From Dicyema japonicum (taxonomy: Eukaryota; Animalia; Dicyemida): a stretch of 40,406 nucleotides of DNA. How positions within the stretch are numbered: position 1 is the first letter of the stretch; every line of letters begins with the position of its first letter. The position numbers and the translations under genes were made by a program. The stretch is from the NCBI GenBank assembly GCA_011109175.1, contig RDEW01000012.1:660184-700589 (forward strand), in the 5' to 3' direction. Shown here piece after piece: positions 3,576 to 35,497 of this stretch. Below the pieces are notes generated by a model, which ran no database searches, had not been told where the DNA came from, and was given only the letters and a program-made list of their open reading frames with translations.

Positions 3576-3646
3576 GAGATTTGTCATATTGGAAAATTGA
3601 TAAGCTTACTAATTCATCGATGTAGTTAATCCCATAGCGTATAATT

Positions 3647-4689
3647 TGTCACGCGTAACGCATGGGCAGCCTGTTACATTTTTTCGACCTTGAAAAGGTC
3701 TTTTGATTATCCGACATTATTATTATTAATGTCGGATCACTGGGTCAAAAAGAAAGAAATAAAAGTTCTCATCTAACTAAGTGATCTCAGACCGACAAAG
3801 GTAAGGATGAGTCCCTCATTGGATTATCCGACATTTAATTTTATATATCCGATTTATATCGTGATTTAATCTCGTTAAATTAGTTTTTTATTTATAAATG
3901 TTATGATTATAAAGATTTTATTTTTTTATAGCGGTAAACAGACCAAGGATGACCCTGGCAGACCAAGGATGACCCTACCTATCATGATGCACAAAGACCT
4001 CCAAAGGATGAAGAAATGCCTAAAGACGGGAGACGATCTGGACATGCTGAGATCGACTGCGTGTAACCGTGGAGGATAAAAGAGGCTAACTAATAACATT
4101 GTTTCTTGTATTGCACATGCTTTGCTATAACTATTATGGCAAGGCGATAAGTGCTGTAATAATAATAGCGGTAAACCTAGATTTCTAGCGTGATTTATAG
4201 CATGGAAGATTATTTTGTTGCAATGGCTTCTTACGAGGGTTTTGTGAAAGATTGCGTTGAATATCAAACTTTAAAAGATGCTTTGCATGATAAACTTCCC
4301 GAAAATCTTCCGAGGTACCGAAAATATAGGCTTGTAAAGAAGATAGAGAATTTTTCTATTATCAATGACAGGTATTGTAAATTTTCACTAATTTTAGACT
4401 GAATCTTAAATCAACTGATCCCAAGTTAGTCATATCCCTGGATAATGAAACCGAAATGGAGCATGTTGCGAAATCGTTGCACGAGTTTTCACACTGAGGA
4501 GTCAATAAAATTGAGTATGAATGTCGACAAAGATACTTCACTGTAAAGAATGAGATTATCAGAAAAGTCATTCGAAATTGTGAAGTCTGCAAATTTTCGC
4601 GTCCTTTAAAAGTTTGTGATTTTTTATAATTGTAGATTGGAGATATAAATCACCATGTGTTTGCTTCTTCTCCAAATGAACGTTTTCAG
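3647..4689 (+). mobile_element. Ginger-like transposon copy A (5' part, truncated by the N gap)
   Basis: Inverted match to 12052-12854 plus about 65 bp of shared flank. Encodes the transposase N-terminus with HHCC motif (H..FSH*G...CEVC). Introns at 4372-4397 (26 nt) and 4612-4635 (24 nt). Confidence 0.8.
3940..4164 (+). mobile_element. 5'-truncated LINE 3' end with (TAA)n tail and 12-bp TSD
   Basis: Flanked by atagcggtaaac (3928-3939 and 4165-4176) and absent from the paralogous Ginger copy B. Encodes RPRMTLPIMMHKDL. Confidence 0.88.
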
Positions 4690-9748: not shown

Positions 9749-10125
9749 TCTAACCCAATTGTAAATATAATTCAAAACAATCTAAAAATATCCATCAATT
9801 ATGGTGGCAGCTCTCAAAATCGAATACTCATTTCCCCCAACGATTTGTAAGAAAATTCGATCAAACAGCTTCTCTCTCGATAATCCATTTCCACTCGATA
9901 CAAATTAGCAGTTTTAAAACCCCCAATGATCTCCAAGTTTTCTTCTGTAACCGGTTCGAAAATAAACTACCCTTCATCGAATGATTTGTCAATAATTTAA
10001 AATCCGATGATTTAACCGCAATGAATTTACCTAAAACCTATGTCACGATTGGACCTCGACATCTAGATACTCGATCGAAAGAACAGGACTAATATAAAAT
10101 ACTTAATTTAATTAAAAAGAGACAT

Positions 10126-10742
10126 TGACAAGGTCCCCCACTGTCCTTGGAGTCAAGTACGACAGCCTTCTCAATTTAAACTCCCACGCAACAGACATGA
10201 TTACCAGGGGCCTCCAGAAAGTTAACGTTATACGCGCCCTGTTCGGAGGACCACGAGGAACATGGACTTTTCCGTTTCTACCCTCTACCAACAAACAATC
10301 GCGCCTGCCATTGAGTATGCCTCCGTTGCATGGAGATTCGGGCTATCGGAGTCTATGGTCCAAAAAATCAACTCGATATACCGGAAAACAATCAGTATGC
10401 TTTGCCCACGTAATGGATCAACAGTCGACCCACTACTCATGGAAGCTATCATCCGTAGTCGTGGCTCCGGATTTCTTCGCGTCTTTGAGGAAGATGGAAA
10501 TCCGCTTCGCCTGATCCTTCCTATGGCAAGAGAAAACCGATTGGATAAGAAATTCCCCTACCCGATCGGATTCCTCTGCAAGACCGAGAGAAGGCTTTTC
10601 CGGAAAGTAGTGGGGACGATGGAAGATCACAGACGTCGAATGGCACAATTGATTGCGAGGACTGGGATCACCTAACTGTTTGACTCTTTAGTCTTTCTTT
10701 CTCGGTGTTCCCAGGATTATTAAAATAAAAAATAAATAAAAA
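10126..10742 (+). mobile_element. 5'-truncated Jockey/I-like LINE 3' end with A-rich tail and 13-bp TSD
   Basis: TSD taaaaagagacat (10113-10125 and 10743-10755). Homologous to 32790-33030 plus 35498-35870 and to 17042-17415. Encodes YQQTIAPAIEYASVAW. Confidence 0.88.
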
Positions 10743-10841
10743 TAAAAAGAGACATGGAAAAATATCGAATCGTATGCTTCAACTGCAAAAATCGTGAAAA
10801 AAGTCGATCGAATTAAGCCATTTGAGTATGATAATCTATTA

Positions 10842-12854
10842 TGTCACATGGGCCAAGAGTTACTTATGGGCAGCCTGTTGCATTAACCTTGAACCAAGAT
10901 TAACTTCAATTAATTTTATCAATAATTTATTAACCACAAAAAATTAAATTTAAGTAACTTTTTTTAGTCTACTCATTAATACAGTCGATATTTCTCCTTT
11001 CGAATTTTTTATCTATCAAATTAAACTATTTAAAACTACCTCAACGCGATTATTCGATAAAATTTTAATTATTTCTGCAACTGGATAATACTGAGACTCA
11101 AACTTATCGAGTCGCAATGAGGGATTTGTTCCAAGTCATTTTTAGCCCGAACCTATTTATTAATGTTTTTGATTCATACTTTATCTCCCATGTTAAAAGT
11201 ATATTTACTATTATGAACATTCATTTTCCTGTTCATAGCTTTGTAATAATTCGAATTTTCTTCAATCGATTTAATTTCGAAATTGAATCTCTTCGCATTC
11301 GGACACAAATTATCTGACTGGGAATTATCTAGATATAAATTTTTTAAATCAAACTACGTGAATTTTCAATAGATTCTGGAGTCGAACAATTAACCAAATC
11401 GTCAATTTGTTGTGGAATCGCACACTCATCACTTAAATTATCTAAGTATAATGTGATATAAGTATAACCATTAATTATTGAATTTATTCCCTTAATTCCT
11501 CGATATCTTTCGAAAGGACTTTCGTTAGAAAATGAATGGACCGATATGTTGTAACTGTAGACAGCACTTTCTAATTTATCAAGCCTCTTTTTTTCACTGT
11601 TATCCAGCATTTTTGACAACTTTCTCGTGATCGTCTGATTAAATCTTTCGACAATTTTTTGTGCTCGTGGATTGTTAAGCCTTCCGTGAATTTGCTTAAT
11701 GTTAAAATCTTCACAAAGTTTTGTTATTTCTTGATTTTTAAATTCAGAACCATTGTCCGACTGAAGAAATATACATGGCCCATTCAGGCGGAACAAAGAT
11801 CTTAAGTTTTCACATACTTCTTTACCAGACTTATTATAGAGTGGTCGTACAAAAGCGAATCTATAAATTAAAAAAAAGCCAAAATCTTAAGTTTTCACAT
11901 ACTTCTTTACCAGACTTATTATAGAGTGGTCGTACAAAAGCGAATCTATAAATTAAAAAAAAGCCAAACTACTATATATGTCAATGACCGTTAAAACCCA
12001 TTTGAAATTTTCATTTAATGTTGAAAATTTTTTCAGGTCTATTAGATCTACATGAAAACGTTCATTTGGAGAAGAAGCAAACACATAGTGATTTATATCT
12101 CTAATCTACAATTATAAAAAATCAAGAACTTTTAAAGGACGCGAAAATTTGCAGACTTCACAAATTCGAATGACTTTTCTGATAATCTCATTCTTTACAG
12201 TGAAGTATCTTTGTCGACATTCATACTCAATTTTATTGATTCCTCAGTGTGAAAACTTGTGCAACGATTTCGCAACATGCTCCATTTCGGTTTCATTATC
12301 CAGGGATATGACTAACTTGGGATCAGTTGATTTAAGATACAGTCTAAAATTATTAAAAATTTACGATACCTGTCATTGATAATAAAAAAATTCTCTATCT
12401 TCTTTACTAGCCTATATTTTCGGTGCCTCGGAAGATTTTCGGGAAGTTTCTCATGCAAAGCATCTTTTAAAGTTTGATATTCAACGCAATCTTTCACAAA
12501 ACCCTTGTAAGAAGCCATTGCAACAAAATAATCTTCCATGCTATAAATCACGCTAGAAATCTAGGTTTACCGCTATAAAAAAATAAAATCTTTATAATTA
12601 TAACATTTATAAATAAAAAACTAATTTAACAGGATTAAATCACGATATAAATCGGATATATAAAATTAAATGTCGGATAATCCAATGAGGGTACTCATCC
12701 TCACCTTTGTCGGTCTGTGATCACTTAGTTAGATGAGAACTTTTATTTCTTTCTTTTTGACCCAGTGATCCGACATTAATAATAATAATGTCGGATAATC
12801 AAGGTCGAAAAAATGTAACAGGCTGCCCATGCGTTACGCGCCGCCCATGTGACA
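10842..12854 (-). mobile_element. Ginger (Gypsy-integrase-related) DNA transposon, full length but inactivated
   Basis: About 45 bp TIRs tgtcacatgggc...atgggcagcctgtt at both ends; candidate 5-bp TSD tatta/aatta. Transposase from ATG 12539 has HHCC, ERFHVDLID, VIDIYS(R)F, LQSDNGSEF, HGRLNNPRAQKIVERFNQT and C-terminal FNMGDKV. Contains a premature TGA and an 85-bp duplication. Confidence 0.85.
11799..11968. repeat. 85-bp tandem duplication inside the Ginger transposase
   Basis: 11799-11883 is repeated at 11884-11968. Confidence 0.95.
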
Positions 12855-13255
12855 AATTATACGCTATGGGATTAACCACATCGATGAATTAGTAAGCTTA
12901 TCAATTTTCCAATTTGACAACTATAAACCACTACTATAAACTGAGTTTGTCGCTACCCTGTGCACAATATCGAAATCTGTCGTTTTATATAGTCCTAATG
13001 ATTTACGTTTGGTAATCTAGCATAATTCATAACTATGAAATACAAAGTCCACAAAAAATAGATGTTGATTGTTAAATAGCTAATTTCAATCTTAGAAGTC
13101 GAAAACTGAATAAAATCTGTTGGACTTTGTGGGAGTGACGTTGCAAGCTGGACTAATAACTTGATAAATCTGCGACCTCTTCGACTGGGACACGAACCAG
13201 CTGGAATTGTATAAGAAGTCAGGTCAAATGTTACAAATTTAGTGACGTTTAAGAA

Positions 13256-14657: not shown

Positions 14658-17041
14658 CAGCGGTTCTCAACCTGGGGTCGATTCGACGCCCAGCTGTCTA
14701 GTATCAATCCAGATCGATTGTAAGGAAATCGAAAATGAAATACTTTGGGGTCGAAAATATATTTAATATTTCTCATTTTAAACTAACTTAGTTTATTTTT
14801 AAACTGGCAAACCTTTGTTCTTTAAAATTTTTAAAATTACCATGCTTGTTTTTGTTCGTGTATGAGTCGTCCTTCTACAATAAAAATTCGTCAATATAAA
14901 AATGAATATTTAAATTTATAAAAAAATTCTTTTGATACTAAACCATATTGCATACTGTGTAATAAGTCATTATCAAATGATGCAATGAAACCGTCTAAAT
15001 TGTTGGATCAATTTATAAAAAAATTCTTTTGATACTAAACCATATTGCTTACTGTGTAATAAGTCATTATCAAATGATGCAATGAAACCGTCTAAATTGT
15101 TGGATCATCTTAGGAGAATACACTCGGATAAAAAAGATAAACCATTAGAGTATTTTGAAAAATTAAAGGATTCTTTTTGTAAACAAAAAACGATTGACAC
15201 TGTTTTTACAAATAGTAATGAAAGAATCAATAGTTGTTGTCATTTTAAATTATATTTAGGAATACTAATTGCATCCTATAAAATTACAATGATTATTGCC
15301 AAAAATGAGAGTTCCCATGTTTCTGGTGAAAATCTCATCAAACATCTATATCAGTGATTCTATCAGATCTGATGGGTTTAAATCTCGACGAAATTTTAAA
15401 ATCCGTACCAATTAGCAATGATTCAATTCGCCCAGGATTGACGAAATGTCTGATAATGTTGAACATATTTTATGTGAAAGGCTTAAAAATAATATTTTTT
15501 TCGCTTTAAATTGACGAAAGTCATATATGTGACAACTAATCAATTCTAATGGGAAATGTCAGGTTAATCTTATTAGAAGCTTTCCCTTTAAGATATTTTG
15601 ACGATCATGCTCTTCCTAAAGAAGCTTTATTATTCGTCAAATATTTGGAAACTGATACGACTGGATTTTCTATTTTTTCCGTAGTCAATTTATTTTTGGA
15701 TGACAAGAAGATTTCATATGTAAATTTGGTTTCTTTTGCCACAGATAGTTGCAATGTCTATGGTTGGAAAATATAAAGGATTTGCGGCATATTTGAAAAA
15801 AATATGTCCAAATGTGATTCATATACATTGCGTTCTACATATACAAAATTTGGTTTCAAAAGCTCTTTCACCAATTCTACATGAAACGTTAAATATAGTT
15901 ATTAAAACCATAAACAAAATTAAAGCAAGTATGATCGTCTTATTAGAAAATGTTGCTATGAGGCTAAAGAAACATATGTCCGTCTTGCGCTTCACACTGA
16001 GGTTATAGTTTCCAATTTTATTTTATAGGTACGATGATTATTAAAGCGGGTTGCATTTGAACGATTTTCAATGTTATTTGATACAATCGTAAATTTTCTT
16101 ATTTCTGAGGGTGATAAAAATTTAGCAGATTTAATTGTATCGAAAAAAAAAGAAATTGTTTATTTTACTTGGATTTTTGGAAAATTTAATGAAGTTTCAT
16201 TATAACTTCAGGGAAAGTATGTGACACGTAAATAGATTGTAAAAGAATTATTCAAATATTCATCGAAAAAATTAAGTTATATAAATATAACTTGAAAAAA
16301 AAGAAATTATTATAACATTCCCGAATTCCACTCAATTGGTCAAACATTTGATGATGAAGATATTAACAACTTTTTGCAACATTTATTACGTGTAGAAAAA
16401 GATTTGATTCTTTGATTCCAAGATATTCTTGAATTTGAAATTTCATTTTAAATGTTTAATCCGTTTTTGTCAAAGCGAGAAGAACAAAAAGAAAATATTA
16501 AAGACGAATTAATTATGCTAAAATTCAATCCAGAATTAAAACTATATTATAATGATACACAATCACCTGTTATTTTTTGGCAAAATATGAAAGTGAAAGA
16601 GAGTTATCCAAAATAGTGGACAGAATTGCTACTCTATTTTCCGACATCATTTTGTGTTGAATGAGGATTTAGCATTTTACATCGAATTGTAAATAAAGAA
16701 CGAAACAGATTGCTGTGTCCATTTGAGGAGATATTCGTTTAAAAATAACACAAATAGAGCCAGATATCGAATCTTTGATAATAAAACATCAGTCACAGGG
16801 ATCCCATTGGTATTTAATTCTTTTTTTATTATAAATTTATGCTAAGATACCAACTTAACATCGAGTATATACTTTTTTTGTTTGATTTGATTATTAACAA
16901 TGAATTCAGTTTAGATAGTTAACTAATTCTACTTAGAATTGTCTGTTCTAAATAAAAAAGTTTTAAATGTCAATTAAATATTAGGGGGGTCGAAAAAATT
17001 AGTCAAGGGGTCGACGAGTAAAAAAAGGTTGAAAACCCCTG
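14658..17041 (+). mobile_element. hAT (Buster/Charlie-type) DNA transposon copy 1, pseudogenised
   Basis: TIRs CAGCGGTTCTCAACCT / AGGTTGAAAACCCCTG with subterminal GGGGTCGA repeats. ATG 14862 gives MSRPSTIKIRQYKNEYL, BED finger CLLCNKSLSNDAMKPSKLLDHL, HIHCVLH and HTE|VR. Candidate introns at 15233-15259, 15563-15592 and 16002-16028. 97-bp tandem duplication at 14913-15107. Confidence 0.93.
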
Positions 17042-17445: not shown

Positions 17446-18724
17446 TGAAATCGTTAAAACAAAACAAACAATAGTCATATCATCTAACTAATGTATCAAC
17501 TTCTGGTCTCTCCGACCAGGCCAGCACCCACCTGGATTCTTTTCTAAAATTCTTTTCTAAGCCGGACAATTTAAAGTAAGCATTCACATCTTTCATCATG
17601 CATGCCAGTGTCCCTTCCTCTTTTGCCAAAAGTTTCAAATCATCGATGAATAAGAAATGATTCGCAGAAAAAGTAAAAGAATTAGATTCAGCAGTATTGA
17701 TAGACATGCTCGGAATTTTGCAGACAACATTCTGCTTAGTGGATCCAAAACAAATACAAATAATTGAGGTGATAGAGAGTCACCTTGGAGTATTCCACGT
17801 TCAATATTATTCGTTCCCAATATCTTTTTCCCAAATCTTAATGACACACGCCAGGTTGGAATTATTGATATTACAAACTTGGTTATCCATTCTGGTAGTC
17901 CCGAGTTTTCCAGGATTTTAACAAGATACTCGTGAGTCACTGAATCAAACGCTTTTCTAACATCAATCCATGCACAGAATAGTTTGTTTTCATGGGCTTT
18001 GTTAACACCCAATTCCTTTGCTCCTTGACAGTGTCGTTTTGTCCCAAGCTGATACTCAGTAATTAAATCATAAGTTTCAGCATATTGTGCAATTTTTTTG
18101 TTTACACATTTTGTAACCAGCTTGTATAAGCACGGCATACATGTAATCGGTCTAAGATCCTTAGGGTCAACAGAGTTCTTCTTCTTTGGGATTAGTTATG
18201 TAATCCCCGTATAAAACCATCTTTTCGGTTGACTTTTTCCACTAATGATATCTCTGATCTCTTTAAATAAATATTGATAAAGAGAATCCAACTTCTTGAT
18301 AAAGAAGTTATATACGCAATCAACTCCGGGGGCCTTCCAATTTGGGAGGTAGTCAATTAAATTTGGTATAAAATTATCGTTTATATCAGATTCTTGCTGT
18401 TCAACTCCCGTTATTCTCTTGTTCATTCCAAAACTCAAATCATTTTTATCCCTTTTTTCCCAAACCTCTGTCTAAAATTTAAAGCATTCGGATGTGTCAA
18501 AGCCATCAATGCACTCAATGTCAGAATCTGACTTTAGTTTTGTATAGAATGACCTTCTGTTCAACTCAAATGTAATTGACTTGGGCATTAAAATAGTCAT
18601 GAACAGGCAAATCCACACTTTCTCGAACTCCATTTATTAAATATTCTGTGGACGCGTCAATGGGAATGACTTTTTCAGACTGGGAAAAACCAACCATCAT
18701 TACACCACTAGACAATAATCTCTA
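17446..18724 (-). mobile_element. R4/Dong-like non-LTR retrotransposon, internally deleted, with 12-bp imperfect TSD
   Basis: RT motifs NWKAPGVD, LRPITCMPCLYKL, WIDVRKAFDSV, RGILQGDSLSPQLF and NHFLFIDDLKL. Flanked by ttccattaataa (17434-17445) and ttccatcaataa (18725-18736). Empty site at about 35890. Confidence 0.85.
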
Positions 18725-30764: not shown

Positions 30765-31643
30765 TTGAAACGAACAATTGTACTCATGGTTGTGAAAAAA
30801 GGAAAGCCAAGGTCAAAAGCAGATAGTTATAGGCCAATTAGCCTAGTCTGCTCAATATCGAAAGTTATGGAAAAAATTGTTTTCAATCGTCTATCAAGGC
30901 ATGTTGAGGATAATAATTTTCTCTCTGATAATCAACTGGGATTTCGGAAATAAAAAAGGGACTGGAGATTGCTTTAAAGAGCTAAGATCTGCAATCGAAA
31001 TTTCACGAAATAAAAAGGAATTTCTTACAATAGCATGTTTGGATATAACAAAAGCGTTTGACAGTGTTTGGCACTTTGGANNNNNNNNNNNNNNNNNNNN
31101 NNNNNNNNNNNNNNNNNNNNNNNNNNNNNNNNNNNNNNNNNNNNNNNNNNNNNNNNNNNNNNNNNNNNNNNNNNNNNNNNNNNNNNNNNNNNNNNNNNNN
31201 NNNNNNNNNNNNNNNNNNNNNNNNNNNNNNNNNNNNNNNNNNNNNNNNNNNNNNNNNNNNNNNNNNNNNNGACTGGAGATTGCTTTAAAGAGCTAAGATC
31301 TGCAATCGAAATTTCACGAAATAAAAAGGAATTTCTTACAATAGCATGTTTGGATATAACAAAAACGTTTGACAGTGTTTGGCACTTTGGACTTCTTGAT
31401 ACGTTGTCAAAAGCAGAAATTGGGAAAACTGCGTTATTATGGATTGAAAACTTTCTTTCAAAAAGAATGTCAAATATACGTGTTGGAAATTTAATTTCAA
31501 AGAAAATTGAATTGCGAAGAGGAGTTACACAGGGTTCAATTCTCAGCCCGCTACTCTTCAATTGCGTAATGAGAGATTTGCCGAAAACAGAAAGCGTAAA
31601 TAGTCAAATGATTATTTATGCTGATGACATTCTTGTGCTTGAT
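30765..31643 (+). mobile_element. Jockey/I-like LINE reverse transcriptase, interrupted by gaps
   Basis: YRPISLVCSISKVMEK, QLGFR, LDITKAFDSVWH, GVTQGSILSPLLFN and IYADD. 30960-31080 is repeated after the 190-N gap. Confidence 0.92.
31081..31270. other. Assembly gap (190 N), probably a false gap (flanks overlap by about 120 bp)
   Basis: The sequence after the gap restarts at gactggagattgc, already present at 30960. Confidence 0.85.
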
Positions 31644-32491
31644 TNNNNNNNNNNNNNNNNNNNNNNNNNNNNNNNNNNNNNNNNNNNNNNNNNNNNNNNN
31701 NNNNNNNNNNNNNNNNNNNNNNNNNNNNNNNNNNNNNNNNNNNNNNNNNNNNNNNNNNNNNNNNNNNNNNNNNNNNNNNNNNNNNNNNNNNNNNNNNNNN
31801 NNNNNNNNNNNNNNNNNNNNNNNNNNNNNNNNNNNNNNNNNNNNNNNNNNNNNNNNNNNNNNNNNNNNNNNNNNNNNNNNNNNNNNNNNNNNNNNNNNNN
31901 NNNNNNNNNNNNNNNNNNNNNNNNNNNNNNNNNNNNNNNNNNNNNNNNNNNNNNNNNNNNNNNNNNNNNNNNNNNNNNNNNNNNNNNNNNNNNNNNNNNN
32001 NNNNNNNNNNNNNNNNNNNNNNNNNNNNNNNNNNNNNNNNNNNNNNNNNNNNNNNNNNNNNNNNNNNNNNNNNNNNNNNNNNNNNNNNNNNNNNNNNNNN
32101 NNNNNNNNNNNNNNNNNNNNNNNNNNNNNNNNNNNNNNNNNNNNNNNNNNNNNNNNNNNNNNNNNNNNNNNNNNNNNNNNNNNNNNNNNNNNNNNNNNNN
32201 NNNNNNNNNNNNNNNNNNNNNNNNNNNNNNNNNNNNNNNNNNNNNNNNNNNNNNNNNNNNNNNNNNNNNNNNNNNNNNNNNNNNNNNNNNNNNNNNNNNN
32301 NNNNNNNNNNNNNNNNNNNNNNNNNNNNNNNNNNNNNNNNNNNNNNNNNNNNNNNNNNNNNNNNNNNNNNNNNNNNNNNNNNNNNNNNNNNNNNNNNNNN
32401 NNNNNNNNNNNNNNNNNNNNNNNNNNNNNNNNNNNNNNNNNNNNNNNNNNNNNNNNNNNNNNNNNNNNNNNNNNNNNNNNNNNNNNNNNNN
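31644..32491. other. Assembly gap (848 N)
   Basis: Run of N. Confidence 1.
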
Positions 32492-33030
32492 GTACCCCAT
32501 GGGTCTCCACTTTCACCAATTATATTCAACTTATTCCTATACGACCTACCTAATGGTGGAGACGAAGATTCCCTGTTATTATCCTGGCAGACAATGGAGT
32601 CATTGCAAAACGGAACCGTCGACGCAAATAGCAGCCTTAAATACTGAGGCAAAATTGAGCATTCTACACGATTAGATCGTTGGCAATCGACTTACGATTT
32701 CTGCAACCAAGTCTATTTGTACCATTTTCGCTTCGCACCGTCATTCTAAGGAAGAACCGAGCATCTTTATTGGTGCCACTCGGATTACAGTCACAAGGTC
32801 CCCCACTGTCCTTGGAGTCAAGTACGACAGTGTAATCGATTTTAACTCCCAAGCAAAAGATATGATCACCAGGGGCCTCCAGAAAATTAACGTTTTACGC
32901 GCCCTTGTCCGGAGGACCCCGAGGAATATGGACTTTTCTGTTTTACCCTCTGCCAACTAACAATCGCGGCAGCCATTGTGTATGCCTTCGTTGCATGGCG
33001 ATTTGGGCTATCGGAGACTATAGTCTACAG
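32492..33030 (+). mobile_element. Second LINE (RT motifs 4-7 to 3' region), split by the hAT insertion and continuing at 35498-35870
   Basis: VPHGSPLSPIIFNLFLYDLP, then TRSPTVLGVKYDS as in 10126. Continues across the hAT TSD. Confidence 0.85.
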
Positions 33031-35497
33031 CAGGGGTTCTCAACCTGGGGTCGATTCGACCCCCAGGGGTCTAAAATCAATCCAGATCGATCGTAAGGGG
33101 GTCGAAAATATATTTAATCTTTTTCAATTTAAATTAAGTTAGTTTATTTTTAAAGTGGTAAACCTTTGTTCTTTAAAATTTTTAAAATTACCATGCTTGT
33201 TTTTGTTCGTGTATGGTATGAGTCTTTTTTCTACATTAAAAATTCGTCAATATAAAAATGAATATTTGTCATTTGGATTTATAAAAAAATTATTTTAATT
33301 AAACTGTCCAAATTGTTGGATCATCTTAGGAGAAAACATTCTGATAAAAAAGATAAACCATTATTTTGAAGAATTAAAGGATTCTTTTCGTAAACAAAAA
33401 AAACGATTGACACTGTTTTTACAAATATTAGTGAAAGAAACAATAGTCGTATTTATTTTAAATTATATTTAGGAGGACTAATTGCATCCTATAAAATTGC
33501 AATGATTATTGCCAAAAATGAGAGTTCCCATGTTTCTGGTGAAAATCTAATCAAACCATCTATCAGTGATTCTATCAGATCTTATGGGTTTAAATCTTGA
33601 CGAAATTTTAAAATCCGTACCAATTAGCAATGATTCAATTCGCCGCAGGATTGACGAAATGGCAGATAATGTTGAACATATTTTATGTGAAAGGCTTAAA
33701 AATACTATTTTTTCGCTTCAAATTGACGAAAGTCATATATGTCTAATGGGATATGTCAACCAATCAATTCTAATGGGATATGTCAGGTTAATCTTATTAG
33801 AAGCTTACCCCTTAAGATATTTTGAAGATCATGCTCTTCTTACTGATAAGACTGAATTTTCTATTTTTTCCGTAGTCAAATTATTTTTGGATGACATGAA
33901 GATTCCATATGTAAATTTGGTTTCTTGTGCCACAGATGGCAATGTCTATGGTTGGAAAATATAAAGGATTTGCGCCATATTTGAAAAAAAATATGTCCAA
34001 ATGTGATTCATGTACATTGCGTTCTACATAGATAACATTTGGTTTCAAAAGCTCTTTCGCCAATTCTACATGAAACGTTAAATATAGTTATTAAAACCAT
34101 AAACAAAATTAAAGCAAACAGCAAGTATGACCGTCTATTTAAAAAATTTTGCTATGAGGCTAAAGAAACATATGTCCGTCTTGTGCTTCACACTGAGGTT
34201 ATAGTTTCCAATTTTATCATAAACAAAATTAAAGCAAACAGCAAGTATGACCGTCTATTTAAAAAATTTTGCTATGAGGCTAAAGAAACATATGTCCGTC
34301 TTGTGCTTCACACTGAGGTTATAGTTTCCAATTTTATTTTACAGATACGATGGTTATCAAAGGGAATTCCATTAGAACGATTTTCAATATTATTTGACAC
34401 AATCGTAAATTTTCTTACTTCTGATAGTGAGAAAAATTTAGCAGATTTAATTGTATCGAAAAAGAAAGAAATTGTTTATTTGACTTGGATTTTTGGAAAA
34501 TTTAATAAAGTTCATTAGAACTTCAGAGAAAGTATGTGACGTTAATAGATTGTAAAAGAATTATTCAAATATTTATCGAAAAAATTAAGTTGCATAAATA
34601 TATGGAAAATTTAATAAAGTTCATTAGAACTTCAGGGAAAGTATGTGGCGTTAATAGATTGTAAAAGAATTATTCAAATATTTATCGAAAAAATTAAGTT
34701 ATATAAATATATTTTGAAAAAAAGAAATTATTATAACATTCCCGAATTCTACTCAATTGGTCAAACATTTGATGATGAAGATATTAAAAATTTTTTGCAA
34801 CATTTATTAAGTATAGAAAGATTTGATTCTTCGATTCCAAGATATTCTTGAATTAGAAATTCCATCTTGGATGATTAATCCGTTTTTGTCAAAGCCAGAA
34901 GAGCATAAAGAAATTATTAAATAGGAATTAGTTATGTTAAAATTCAATCCAGAATTAAAACTATATTATAATGATTCACAATCACCTTTTATTTTTTGGC
35001 AAAATATGAAAGTGAAAGAGAGTTATCCAAAATTGTGGACAGAAATAGCACAATTGCTACTCTATTTTCCGACATTATACTGTGTTGAATGCGGATTTAG
35101 CATTCTACATCGAATTGTAAATAAAGAACGAAACAGATTGGATGTGTCCATTAGAGGAGATCTTCGTTTTAAAATAACACAAATAGAGCCAGATATCGAA
35201 TCAGCGGTCAAAAAACATCAGTCATAGGGATCCCATTGTTCTTTAATTTTTTTATTATATATTTATACTAAGATAAATCTATAACATCGAGTATATACTT
35301 TTTTTGTTTTATTTGATTATTAACAATGAATCCATTTTAGATAGTTAACTAATTTTACTTAGAATTATCTGTTAAATTAATTAATTTTACTTAAAATTAT
35401 CTGTTCAAAATAAAAAAGTTTTAAGGGGTCGAGTAAATATTAGGGGGGTCGAAAAAAAAGTCAAGGNCGACGAGTAAAAAAAGCTTGAGAACCCCTG
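33031..35497 (+). mobile_element. hAT (Buster/Charlie-type) transposon copy 2 with perfect 8-bp TSD, pseudogenised
   Basis: TIR CAGGGGTTCTCAACCT / AAGCTTGAGAACCCCTG; TSD GTCTACAG (33023-33030 and 35498-35505, central TA). HTE|IRWLSKG and FPTLYCVECGFS motifs. Candidate introns at 33446-33472, 33787-33816 and 34318-34344. Tandem duplications of 120 bp (34098) and 109 bp (34494). Confidence 0.95.

What the first reader, a model, noticed from the sequence alone, without database searches (positions are those of the whole stretch)
10842..12854. Ginger DNA transposase peppered with 24-29 nt spliceosomal introns
The integrase-type transposase reads continuously only after GT..AG blocks are removed: 12344-12369 (26 nt, frameshifting), 12106-12129 (24 nt, in-frame TAA), 11946-11969 (24 nt, splits IDIYS|RF, with one G apparently lost), 11442-11468 (27 nt) and a 29-nt block ending near 11330 that restores frame to the FNMGDKV tail. 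Introns 1 and 2 are conserved in copy A (4372, 4612). Ginger elements are known to have introns, but at least five in this size class implies the transposon's introns have adopted the host's miniature architecture.
Basis: partly seen in the sequence, partly recalled or inferred. Interest (0 to 1): 0.8.

Follow-up and report, generated by a model that had tools for sequence, protein, structure and literature searches.

The report
Ginger-like transposon with seven mini-introns
This is a dead copy of a very abundant cut-and-paste jumping gene in a tiny-intron animal (most likely the octopus parasite Dicyema japonicum); its enzyme gene is split by seven 23-29-base introns that its closest relatives, in microsporidian parasites, lack, so it may show introns being gained.

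Summary
Window 10842-12854 is a 2,013-bp DNA transposon with 43-bp inverted ends (TGTCA...TGACA). Its minus strand encodes an integrase-type transposase (H2C2 zinc finger, DD35E core).

The gene has seven GT..AG blocks, not five. Their lengths are 26, 24, 23, 27, 29, 27 and 27 nt. Once the blocks are removed, the 433-aa product aligns end to end with 11 homologues, with no gap at five of the seven sites.

DNA reads show a hugely multi-copy family. Its majority sequence removes this copy's stop codon and restores GT at intron 3. Length differences among copies fall only inside blocks or outside the coding region. This copy is dead: it has a TGA stop, a mutated splice donor, an 85-bp tandem duplication and a 1-nt deletion.

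The closest relatives (48-55% identity) are intronless elements of microsporidia. The copy groups with Dictyocoela (support 100/100). Mollusc relatives have introns at other positions. The introns were therefore probably gained in the dicyemid lineage.

No RNA data could be reached, so splicing is inferred and not shown. First readers of this scan noted the same family on other pieces of this genome.

The parts
10842..12854 (-). Whole transposon copy B: 2,013 bp, or 1,928 bp without its private 85-bp duplication.
   Evidence: Summed read depth rises several hundred- to a thousand-fold between 10777-10853 and 12779-12855. Inverted ends found. The terminal 12-mer TGTCACATGGGC is perfect at both ends.
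12812..12854 (-). 5' terminal inverted repeat; the end reads TGTCA (TGTNR pattern).
10842..10884 (-). 3' terminal inverted repeat; the end reads TGACA.
12855..12859 (-). Likely 5-bp target-site duplication, left copy TAATT. The right copy, TAATA, lies at 10837-10841. They agree at 4 of 5 bases.
   Evidence: The Dictyocoela muelleri relative has a perfect 5-bp TATTA duplication.
12370..12518 (-). Exon 1. The start ATG at 12518 matches the N-termini of the homologues; an in-frame ATG also lies at 12539.
12344..12369 (-). Intron 1: 26 nt, GT..AG, phase 2.
   Evidence: Conserved in copy A.
12130..12343 (-). Exon 2: H2C2 zinc finger (H78, H82, C111, C114). In-frame TGA at 12246-12244 in this copy.
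   Evidence: The family majority has GGA at the TGA position.
12106..12129 (-). Intron 2: 24 nt, GT..AG, phase 0, holds stop codons.
11969..12105 (-). Exon 3: first catalytic Asp (D141, 12048-12046).
11946..11968 (-). Intron 3: 23 nt, phase 2. It begins TT in this copy and GT in the family majority; about 20% of read depth has GC.
   Evidence: places 11968, 11967.
11799..11968 (-). Exact tandem duplication of 85 bp (intron 3 plus the first 62 nt of exon 4). It shifts the frame and is not a family feature.
   Evidence: Read depth is roughly halved over it.
11469..11860 (-). Exon 4: second Asp (D202) and Glu (E238) of the DD35E triad.
11442..11468 (-). Intron 4: 27 nt, GT..AG, phase 1. It is open in frame in this copy.
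   Evidence: About 40% of read depth has +1 nt and about 6% has -2 nt inside it, which a coding stretch would not tolerate.
11358..11441 (-). Exon 5: variable linker region.
11329..11357 (-). Intron 5: 29 nt, GT..AG, phase 1, shifts the frame.
11180..11328 (-). Exon 6: start of the conserved C-terminal domain.
11153..11179 (-). Intron 6: 27 nt, GT..AG, phase 0, holds stop codons.
11040..11152 (-). Exon 7, with a 1-nt deletion at 11133/11132 in this copy.
   Evidence: (insertion and loose ends at 11132-11134).
11013..11039 (-). Intron 7: 27 nt, GT..AG, phase 0, holds stop codons.
10950..11012 (-). Exon 8 and the stop codon TAA (10952-10950). An AATAAA hexamer follows at 10931-10926.
3581..4688 (+). 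Copy A: the 5' part of a second copy, which runs into an assembly gap. It shares the TGA and 68 bp of flank with copy B and keeps introns 1 and 2.

Best explanation
Copy B is a recently inactivated member of a very abundant family of Ginger2/TDD-like cut-and-paste DNA transposons. The host is a tiny-intron animal, most likely Dicyema japonicum.

How an intact member would work (inferred):
1. It is transcribed from its 5' region.
2. The host spliceosome removes seven 23-29-nt GT..AG introns.
3. The resulting transposase of about 433 aa has an H2C2 zinc finger, a DD35E integrase core and an SH3-like C-terminal domain.
4. The transposase binds the TGTCA-tipped inverted ends, cuts the element out and inserts it into AT-rich DNA with a short (probably 5-bp) duplication.

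Shown here: the anatomy of the element, the homology across the junctions, the state of the family majority sequence, and the pattern of variation among copies. Inferred: the splicing itself, the transposition chemistry and the duplication length.

The introns were probably gained after an intronless element of the type now found in microsporidia entered the dicyemid lineage. I put that at roughly 0.6.
For: Element anatomy:
- Inverted ends and TGTNR tips.
- rve and H2C2 matches; D141, D202 and E238 with 35 residues between the last two.

Introns:
- Seven GT..AG blocks, 81% A+T against 68% in exons.
- The spliced product aligns over its whole length with 11 homologues. There is no gap at introns 1, 2, 3, 6 and 7.
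- tblastn shows the blocks as insertions relative to the homologues.

Family state (DNA reads):
- Depth inside the element is hundreds to a thousand times that of the flanks.
- The majority letter turns TGA into GGA and TT into GT at intron 3.
- It moves about ten amino-acid sites to residues conserved in relatives, for example L>P, K>G, R>W and H>Q.
- Of the five length differences within the coding span, four lie in introns 3 and 4. The fifth corrects this copy's own frameshift.
- No intron-sized deletion reaches the 10% listing threshold.
- Internally deleted derivatives are present, as expected for cut-and-paste elements.

Host: intron size and the reduced GTa...AG signals match the literature (PMC13644364, PMC6736024).

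Origin of the introns:
- The closest proteins come from Dictyocoela, Nosema granulosis and Pseudoloma.
- Five genomic loci of this clade are intronless.
- Copy B groups with Dictyocoela at 100/100 support.
- Introns in the Haliotis and Mercenaria gene models lie at other positions.
Against: - No RNA evidence.
- No protein of this animal's family is in the protein collections.
- Introns 4 and 5 lie in a variable linker, where homology cannot fix their borders.
- The target duplication rests on one imperfect pair here and one perfect pair in a relative.
- No curated Ginger1, Ginger2 or TDD reference sequences were available. In my tree the clade sits apart from the KRBA2/SCAND3-like proxies for Ginger2, and the backbone is unresolved.
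- The source organisms of the Logan contigs in the clade are unknown, so the direction of any transfer is not settled.
Confidence: 0.8

Rival explanations
1. The introns are real but old. An intron-bearing animal Ginger2 ancestor carried them, they shrank to host size in the dicyemid, and the microsporidian relatives lost them all.
For: Microsporidia have lost nearly all introns (general knowledge), so any element living there would be intronless. Some animal Ginger-type genes do have introns (PMC2836005). The source organisms of the Logan contigs are unknown.
Against: Copy B is nested inside a clade whose five examined genomic loci are all intronless. The introns in the mollusc relatives lie at other positions. 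This reading needs several independent complete losses.
Confidence: 0.27
2. The blocks are not spliced. The family is a dead or non-autonomous lineage, and the blocks are small insertions inherited from a broken master copy.
For: No RNA evidence. This copy and copy A are both broken.
Against: All seven blocks have GT..AG ends and host-typical length and A+T content. With the blocks removed, the majority letters at every listed differing site keep the frame open and match conserved residues. Length differences are tolerated only inside the blocks. The family is huge and young; this copy differs from the majority by about 1.6-2%.
Confidence: 0.05
3. It is a fragment of an LTR retrotransposon pol gene or a domesticated host integrase gene, not a DNA transposon.
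For: Databases name the relatives 'Gag-Pol polyprotein'.
Against: The element is 2 kb with inverted, not direct, ends. It has no RT, RNase H or gag. Its copy number is very high and deletion derivatives exist. The Dictyocoela relative is a 1.8-kb element with about 203-bp inverted repeats around a single ORF. In the tree it sits apart from Gypsy and Copia pol.
Confidence: 0.02

Closest known systems
Ginger2/TDD DNA transposons (Bao, Kapitonov and Jurka 2010, PMC2836005; TDD-4 and TDD-5 of Dictyostelium)
   Same: - Cut-and-paste element with inverted ends and TGTNR tips.
- AT-rich target with a 4-5-bp duplication.
- A single transposase with an H2C2 finger and a DDE core, without YPYY or GPY/F motifs.
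   Different: - The inverted ends are shorter (43 bp against 50-300 bp).
- It has seven introns of 23-29 nt. The paper reports 1-4 introns, and only for Ginger1.
- In my tree it falls in a clade with microsporidian elements, apart from the KRBA2/SCAND3-like proxies for Ginger2.
Integrase-type elements of microsporidia annotated 'Gag-Pol polyprotein' (Dictyocoela roeselum and D. muelleri, Nosema granulosis, Pseudoloma neurophilia)
   Same: 48-55% protein identity over the full length and the same domain order. The D. muelleri element has TGTCG...CGACA tips, a 5-bp TATTA duplication and a length of 1.8 kb.
   Different: These elements are intronless and have inverted repeats of about 203 bp. Their hosts are fungus-related parasites, not an animal.
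Ginger1 DNA transposons
   Same: Integrase-type transposase, TGTNR tips, and introns known in some families.
   Different: Ginger1 has YPYY and GPY/F motifs, a C-terminal OTU or Ulp1 protease, and CCGG/CCGT 4-bp targets. None of these is present here.
Ultra-short introns of Dicyema japonicum host genes (PMC13644364, PMC6736024)
   Same: Similar length class (under 30 nt), reduced signals (GTa...AG) and high A+T. The intron density of 5.4 per kb of coding sequence equals the host average (6.2 introns per 1,155-bp coding sequence).
   Different: These introns sit in a mobile element, at positions not shared with any relative examined.

Membership tests
Ginger2/TDD DNA transposons | Terminal inverted repeats with TGTNR...YNACA tips | tested here: met
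   The 43-bp inverted repeats are 81% matched and the tips are TGTCA...TGACA.
Ginger2/TDD DNA transposons | 4-5-bp target-site duplication in AT-rich DNA (RTATAY preference) | tested here: inconclusive
   TAATT against TAATA, 4 of 5 bases, for one copy only. The Dictyocoela relative has a perfect 5-bp TATTA. Many copies would be needed.
Ginger2/TDD DNA transposons | Single transposase with an H2C2 zinc finger and a DDE integrase core | tested here: met
   rve and Integrase_H2C2 matches on the pieces and on intact homologues. H78, H82, C111, C114; D141, D202, E238.
Ginger2/TDD DNA transposons | Absence of the YPYY and GPY/F motifs | tested here: met
   Neither motif appears in the spliced product or in the 11-sequence alignment. 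This was checked by eye, not with a model.
Ginger2/TDD DNA transposons | Phylogenetic placement inside the Ginger2 clade | tested here: inconclusive
   It groups with microsporidian elements, apart from the KRBA2/SCAND3-like proxies, and the backbone is unresolved. No curated Ginger2 or TDD references were available.
Ginger1 DNA transposons | YPYY and GPY/F motifs, C-terminal OTU or Ulp1 protease, CCGG/CCGT target | tested here: not met
   No such motifs or domains. The flanks are AT-rich.
Spliceosomal (U2-type) mini-introns of the host | GT..AG ends, length in the host's 20-30-nt class, A+T-rich | tested here: met
   Seven of seven blocks in the family majority; 23-29 nt; 81% A+T. Host values come from PMC13644364.
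Spliceosomal (U2-type) mini-introns of the host | Removed from the mature RNA | not testable with these tools
Spliceosomal (U2-type) mini-introns of the host | Non-coding behaviour: frame-breaking length changes are tolerated, and the flanking exons stay in frame | tested here: met
   The +1, -2, +1 and -1 differences among copies lie in introns 3 and 4. The only listed length difference inside an exon is the one that corrects this copy's own deletion.
LTR retrotransposon pol | RT/RNase H next to the integrase, and direct long terminal repeats | tested here: not met
   The element is 2 kb with inverted ends and one gene. It is separate from Gypsy and Copia in the tree.

The most novel reading that the evidence does not exclude
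An intronless integrase-type transposon of the kind now living in microsporidia crossed into the dicyemid lineage. There it acquired seven new introns, reaching exactly the host's intron density. Earlier notes of this scan describe micro-introns in hAT and Tc1 families of the same genome. Taken together, this would mean that in a genome where GT plus about 25 A+T-rich bases plus AG is enough for splicing, small insertions in expressed genes readily become introns. That would give a datable, multi-copy natural system for watching intron gain in an animal.
Probability: 0.4. Interest if true: 0.8.

Novelty: new variant of a known kind. Interest (0 to 1): 0.6.

Why it matters
Intron gain is rare and hard to catch in animals. 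This transposon family has a measurable age, very many copies and intronless close relatives, yet it carries seven introns at host density and host size. If RNA data confirm splicing, three questions become testable:
- When was each intron gained? Subfamilies and sister dicyemid species could date this.
- Do minimal splice signals make gain easy?
- Do mobile elements depend on, or get regulated by, the host's unusual spliceosome?

The kinship with microsporidian elements also adds a candidate case of transposon exchange between two unrelated groups of parasites of aquatic animals. On the practical side, the family is probably a large, undescribed part of the 49% repeat content of the D. japonicum genome; the genome paper mentions only LINEs.

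Tried and rejected
1. RNA evidence. Both run searches returned only four runs from one sample. These behave as genomic DNA: element-to-flank depth ratios are similar in all four, and Nextera mate-pair adapters appear in two. None of the 15 best-supported joints listed (of 47) is intron-sized.

2. Spliced ORFs of this animal in the protein collections. None were found.

3. Intron origin by tandem duplication of flanking exon sequence, or from a shared 'introner'. Local alignments of each intron to its flanks and to the other introns were no better than shuffles. One nominal p of 0.02 among 14 tests was the only exception.

4. More change in introns than in exons between copies A and B. This was an artefact of small numbers. 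Measured against the family majority, this copy differs by about 1.6% in both.

5. Copy number from summed word depth. The tool warns that this is not a copy number, so only the ratio to the flanks is reported.

6. Direct measurement of host intron sizes in this window. The window is mostly transposons, so host values are taken from papers.

7. Rejected: it is a G>T substitution.

Full report
**What is there.** Window 10842-12854 is bounded by 43-bp inverted repeats. The terminal 12-mer TGTCACATGGGC is perfect at both ends. The minus strand carries pieces of an integrase-type protein: an rve core and an H2C2 zinc-binding domain. A second, partial copy (copy A, 3581-4688, plus strand) runs into an assembly gap.

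**Gene model.** I used tblastn of full-length homologues against the element and an explicit model. The coding region runs from 12518 to the stop at 10952-10950; an in-frame ATG also lies at 12539. It has eight exons and seven introns:

| Intron | Coordinates | Length (nt) | Phase |
|---|---|---|---|
| 1 | 12369-12344 | 26 | 2 |
| 2 | 12129-12106 | 24 | 0 |
| 3 | 11968-11946 | 23 | 2 |
| 4 | 11468-11442 | 27 | 1 |
| 5 | 11357-11329 | 29 | 1 |
| 6 | 11179-11153 | 27 | 0 |
| 7 | 11039-11013 | 27 | 0 |

Introns 6 and 7 are new, and the supposed FNMGDKV tail is in fact followed by a conserved C-terminal domain. The introns are 81% A+T against 68% for the exons.

The spliced 433-aa product was read with X at this copy's two breaks. 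It aligns from first to last residue with 11 homologues. Introns 1, 2, 3, 6 and 7 fall inside conserved blocks where every homologue runs on without a gap. Introns 4 and 5 lie in the variable linker. The catalytic residues are D141, D202 and E238, with 35 residues between the last two. The zinc ligands are H78, H82, C111 and C114.

**This copy is dead.** It carries four lesions:
- An in-frame TGA at 12246-12244, shared with copy A.
- T instead of G at the first base of intron 3.
- An exact 85-bp tandem duplication (11968-11884 and 11883-11799) that starts at that intron.
- A 1-nt deletion at 11133/11132.

**The family is alive or recently was.** I laid the contigs of four runs from one sample on 10700-13000.
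- The summed word depth inside the element is 2e5 to 1e6 in the largest run, against 3e2 to 3e3 in the flanks. The edges fall at the inverted repeats.
- All four runs behave as genomic DNA. Two carry the Nextera mate-pair adapter, which fits the library design of the Dicyema japonicum genome project (PMC6736024).
- At about 30 places nearly all other copies differ from copy B. Classified on the gene model, these majority letters change TGA to GGA and restore GT at intron 3.
- They also move about ten amino-acid sites to the residue conserved in relatives, for example HGRL to HGRP, AQK to AQG, KKR to KKW and RFH to RFQ (compare).
- Copy B's private changes run 17 non-synonymous to 5 synonymous, as expected for neutral decay. 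Five intermediate-frequency differences split 3 synonymous to 2 non-synonymous.
- Depth is roughly halved over the duplicated 170 nt, so the duplication is not a family feature.
- Many rare joints are internal deletions, for example 11079 to 12135, seen in three runs. This is the usual debris of cut-and-paste elements.

**Are the blocks introns?** There are four lines of evidence.
1. All seven are GT..AG in the family majority. About 20% of the depth has GC at intron 3.
2. Six of the seven shift the frame or hold stop codons, so they cannot be coding.
3. Length differences among copies that reach the listing threshold lie only in intron 3 (+1, -1), in intron 4 (+1 in about 40% of depth, -2 in about 6%) or outside the coding region. 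The one exception is the insertion at 11132, which corrects copy B's own deletion. Introns make up 12% of the coding span, so four of four falling there by chance has a probability of about 2e-4. Homopolymer runs in intron 3 weaken that figure somewhat.
4. No intron-sized deletion reaches 10% of depth, so all seven introns were present before the family expanded.

Size and signals match what is published for D. japonicum. Its introns are under 30 nt, with the 5' signal reduced to GTa and the 3' signal reduced to AG (PMC13644364). It has 6.2 introns per 1,155-bp coding sequence (PMC6736024). That is 5.4 per kb, the same density as seven introns in 1.3 kb.

What is missing is RNA. No RNA run holds the element, and the read tools' caps are spent. 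The protein collections hold no product of this animal's family.

**What kind of element.** Bao et al. (PMC2836005) define the two Ginger groups.
- Ginger1: YPYY and GPY/F motifs, a C-terminal OTU or Ulp1 protease, and CCGG targets.
- Ginger2/TDD: TGTNR tips, AT-rich targets, 4-5-bp duplications, and H2C2 plus DDE without those motifs.

This element has TGTCA tips and AT-rich flanks with TAATT against TAATA. It has H2C2 plus DDE only, and no YPYY or GPY/F is visible in the alignment. It therefore works like Ginger2/TDD. Membership by phylogeny is open because I had no curated references.

**Relatives.** A full HMMER scan with the 172-aa core piece gave 4,956 hits. The best were proteins of 400-460 aa that match from about residue 168. 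Names came from a second search. The closest are annotated 'Gag-Pol polyprotein' and belong to the microsporidia Dictyocoela roeselum (55%), D. muelleri (48%) and Nosema granulosis, plus a 'transposable element' of Pseudoloma neurophilia. KRBA2-like and SCAND3-like animal proteins, which PMC3575427 derives from Ginger2, are more distant.

The D. muelleri locus is a 1.8-kb element. It has inverted repeats of about 203 bp, TGTCG...CGACA tips, a perfect 5-bp TATTA duplication and one uninterrupted ORF. A decayed D. muelleri copy and the D. roeselum contig also lack all the blocks. So do two Logan contigs, which carry GC-rich TGT-tipped ends and are therefore genomic.

In a maximum-likelihood tree of 45 integrase regions, copy B joins the two Dictyocoela sequences with 100/100 support. 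This group sits inside a clade of microsporidian and Logan sequences (93/89). That clade is apart from the KRBA2/SCAND3-like group and from Gypsy and Copia pol. The backbone is unresolved. I left out four very partial rows (P0074, P0109, P0179, P0228).

Gene models of a Haliotis KRBA2-like gene and a Mercenaria SCAND3-like gene have introns, but at other positions.

**Origin of the introns.** Copy B is nested among intronless relatives, and no intron position is shared with any relative examined. Gain within the dicyemid lineage is therefore the more economical reading (about 0.6). The alternative is loss in microsporidia of introns inherited from an animal ancestor (about 0.3). I found no trace of origin by duplication of flanking exon sequence and no similarity among the introns. 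A plausible but untested mechanism follows from the host's minimal splice signals: any small A+T-rich insertion that happens to have GT and AG at its ends could be spliced out, and so would be harmless.

**Context from this scan.** First readers noted the same family on two other pieces of this genome, one of them with seven micro-introns. Follow-up agents described micro-introns in a Buster hAT family and a Tc1 family, and first readers noted hAT cases in this window. I did not test those. If they hold, intron-bearing DNA transposons are a general feature of this genome.

**Verdict.** This is a real, well-supported feature: a new intron-rich variant of a Ginger2/TDD-like transposon. The splicing is inferred from comparative and population-style evidence, not yet from RNA.

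Noticed in passing
window 3940-4164 (copy A): Copy A carries a 225-bp insertion that ends in (TAA)n-like sequence. It is flanked by a 12-bp direct repeat ATAGCGGTAAAC (3928-3939 and 4165-4176). It looks like a SINE or LINE-tail retroposon that landed in the transposon's 5' region.
   Followed up: partly
window 12693-12771: Read depth here is 2-8 times that of the rest of the element. Many contigs break away at exactly 12693 and 12771. This stretch of about 78 bp in the 5' region, next to the palindrome at 12768-12796, is shared with another, even more abundant repeat.
   Followed up: no
window 12855-12922 and 3581-3650: Copies A and B share 68 bp of flank beyond the inverted repeat, as well as the same TGA. 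Depth there is intermediate, about 3% of the element's. Either the element landed in another repeat and the composite was duplicated in inverted orientation, or a minor subfamily has an extended end (it also starts TGTCA at about 12920).
   Followed up: partly
window 11967: About 20% of the family's read depth has GC instead of GT at the start of intron 3. This is either a GC-AG variant or a set of splice-dead copies.
   Followed up: no
window 10125-10675: The element sits next to the C-terminal part of a LINE reverse-transcriptase ORF with higher G+C (about 40%). The window as a whole is mostly transposons (LINE RT at 2-418, 17635-18138 and 30877-32675; hAT-like ORFs at 15082-16008 and 33566-34518).
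   Followed up: no
L006 2793-4588 (Dictyocoela muelleri SDVU01000034.1): A complete intronless relative: 1.8 kb, inverted repeats of about 203 bp at 98%, GC-rich tips TGTCGCGCGCG, and a perfect 5-bp TATTA target duplication. Databases name it 'Gag-Pol polyprotein', which is a misannotation of a DNA transposon.
   Followed up: partly
window 11079-12135 and other joints: Reads hold many internally deleted derivatives of the family, for example a 1,055-bp deletion seen in three runs. These are candidate non-autonomous elements.
   Followed up: no
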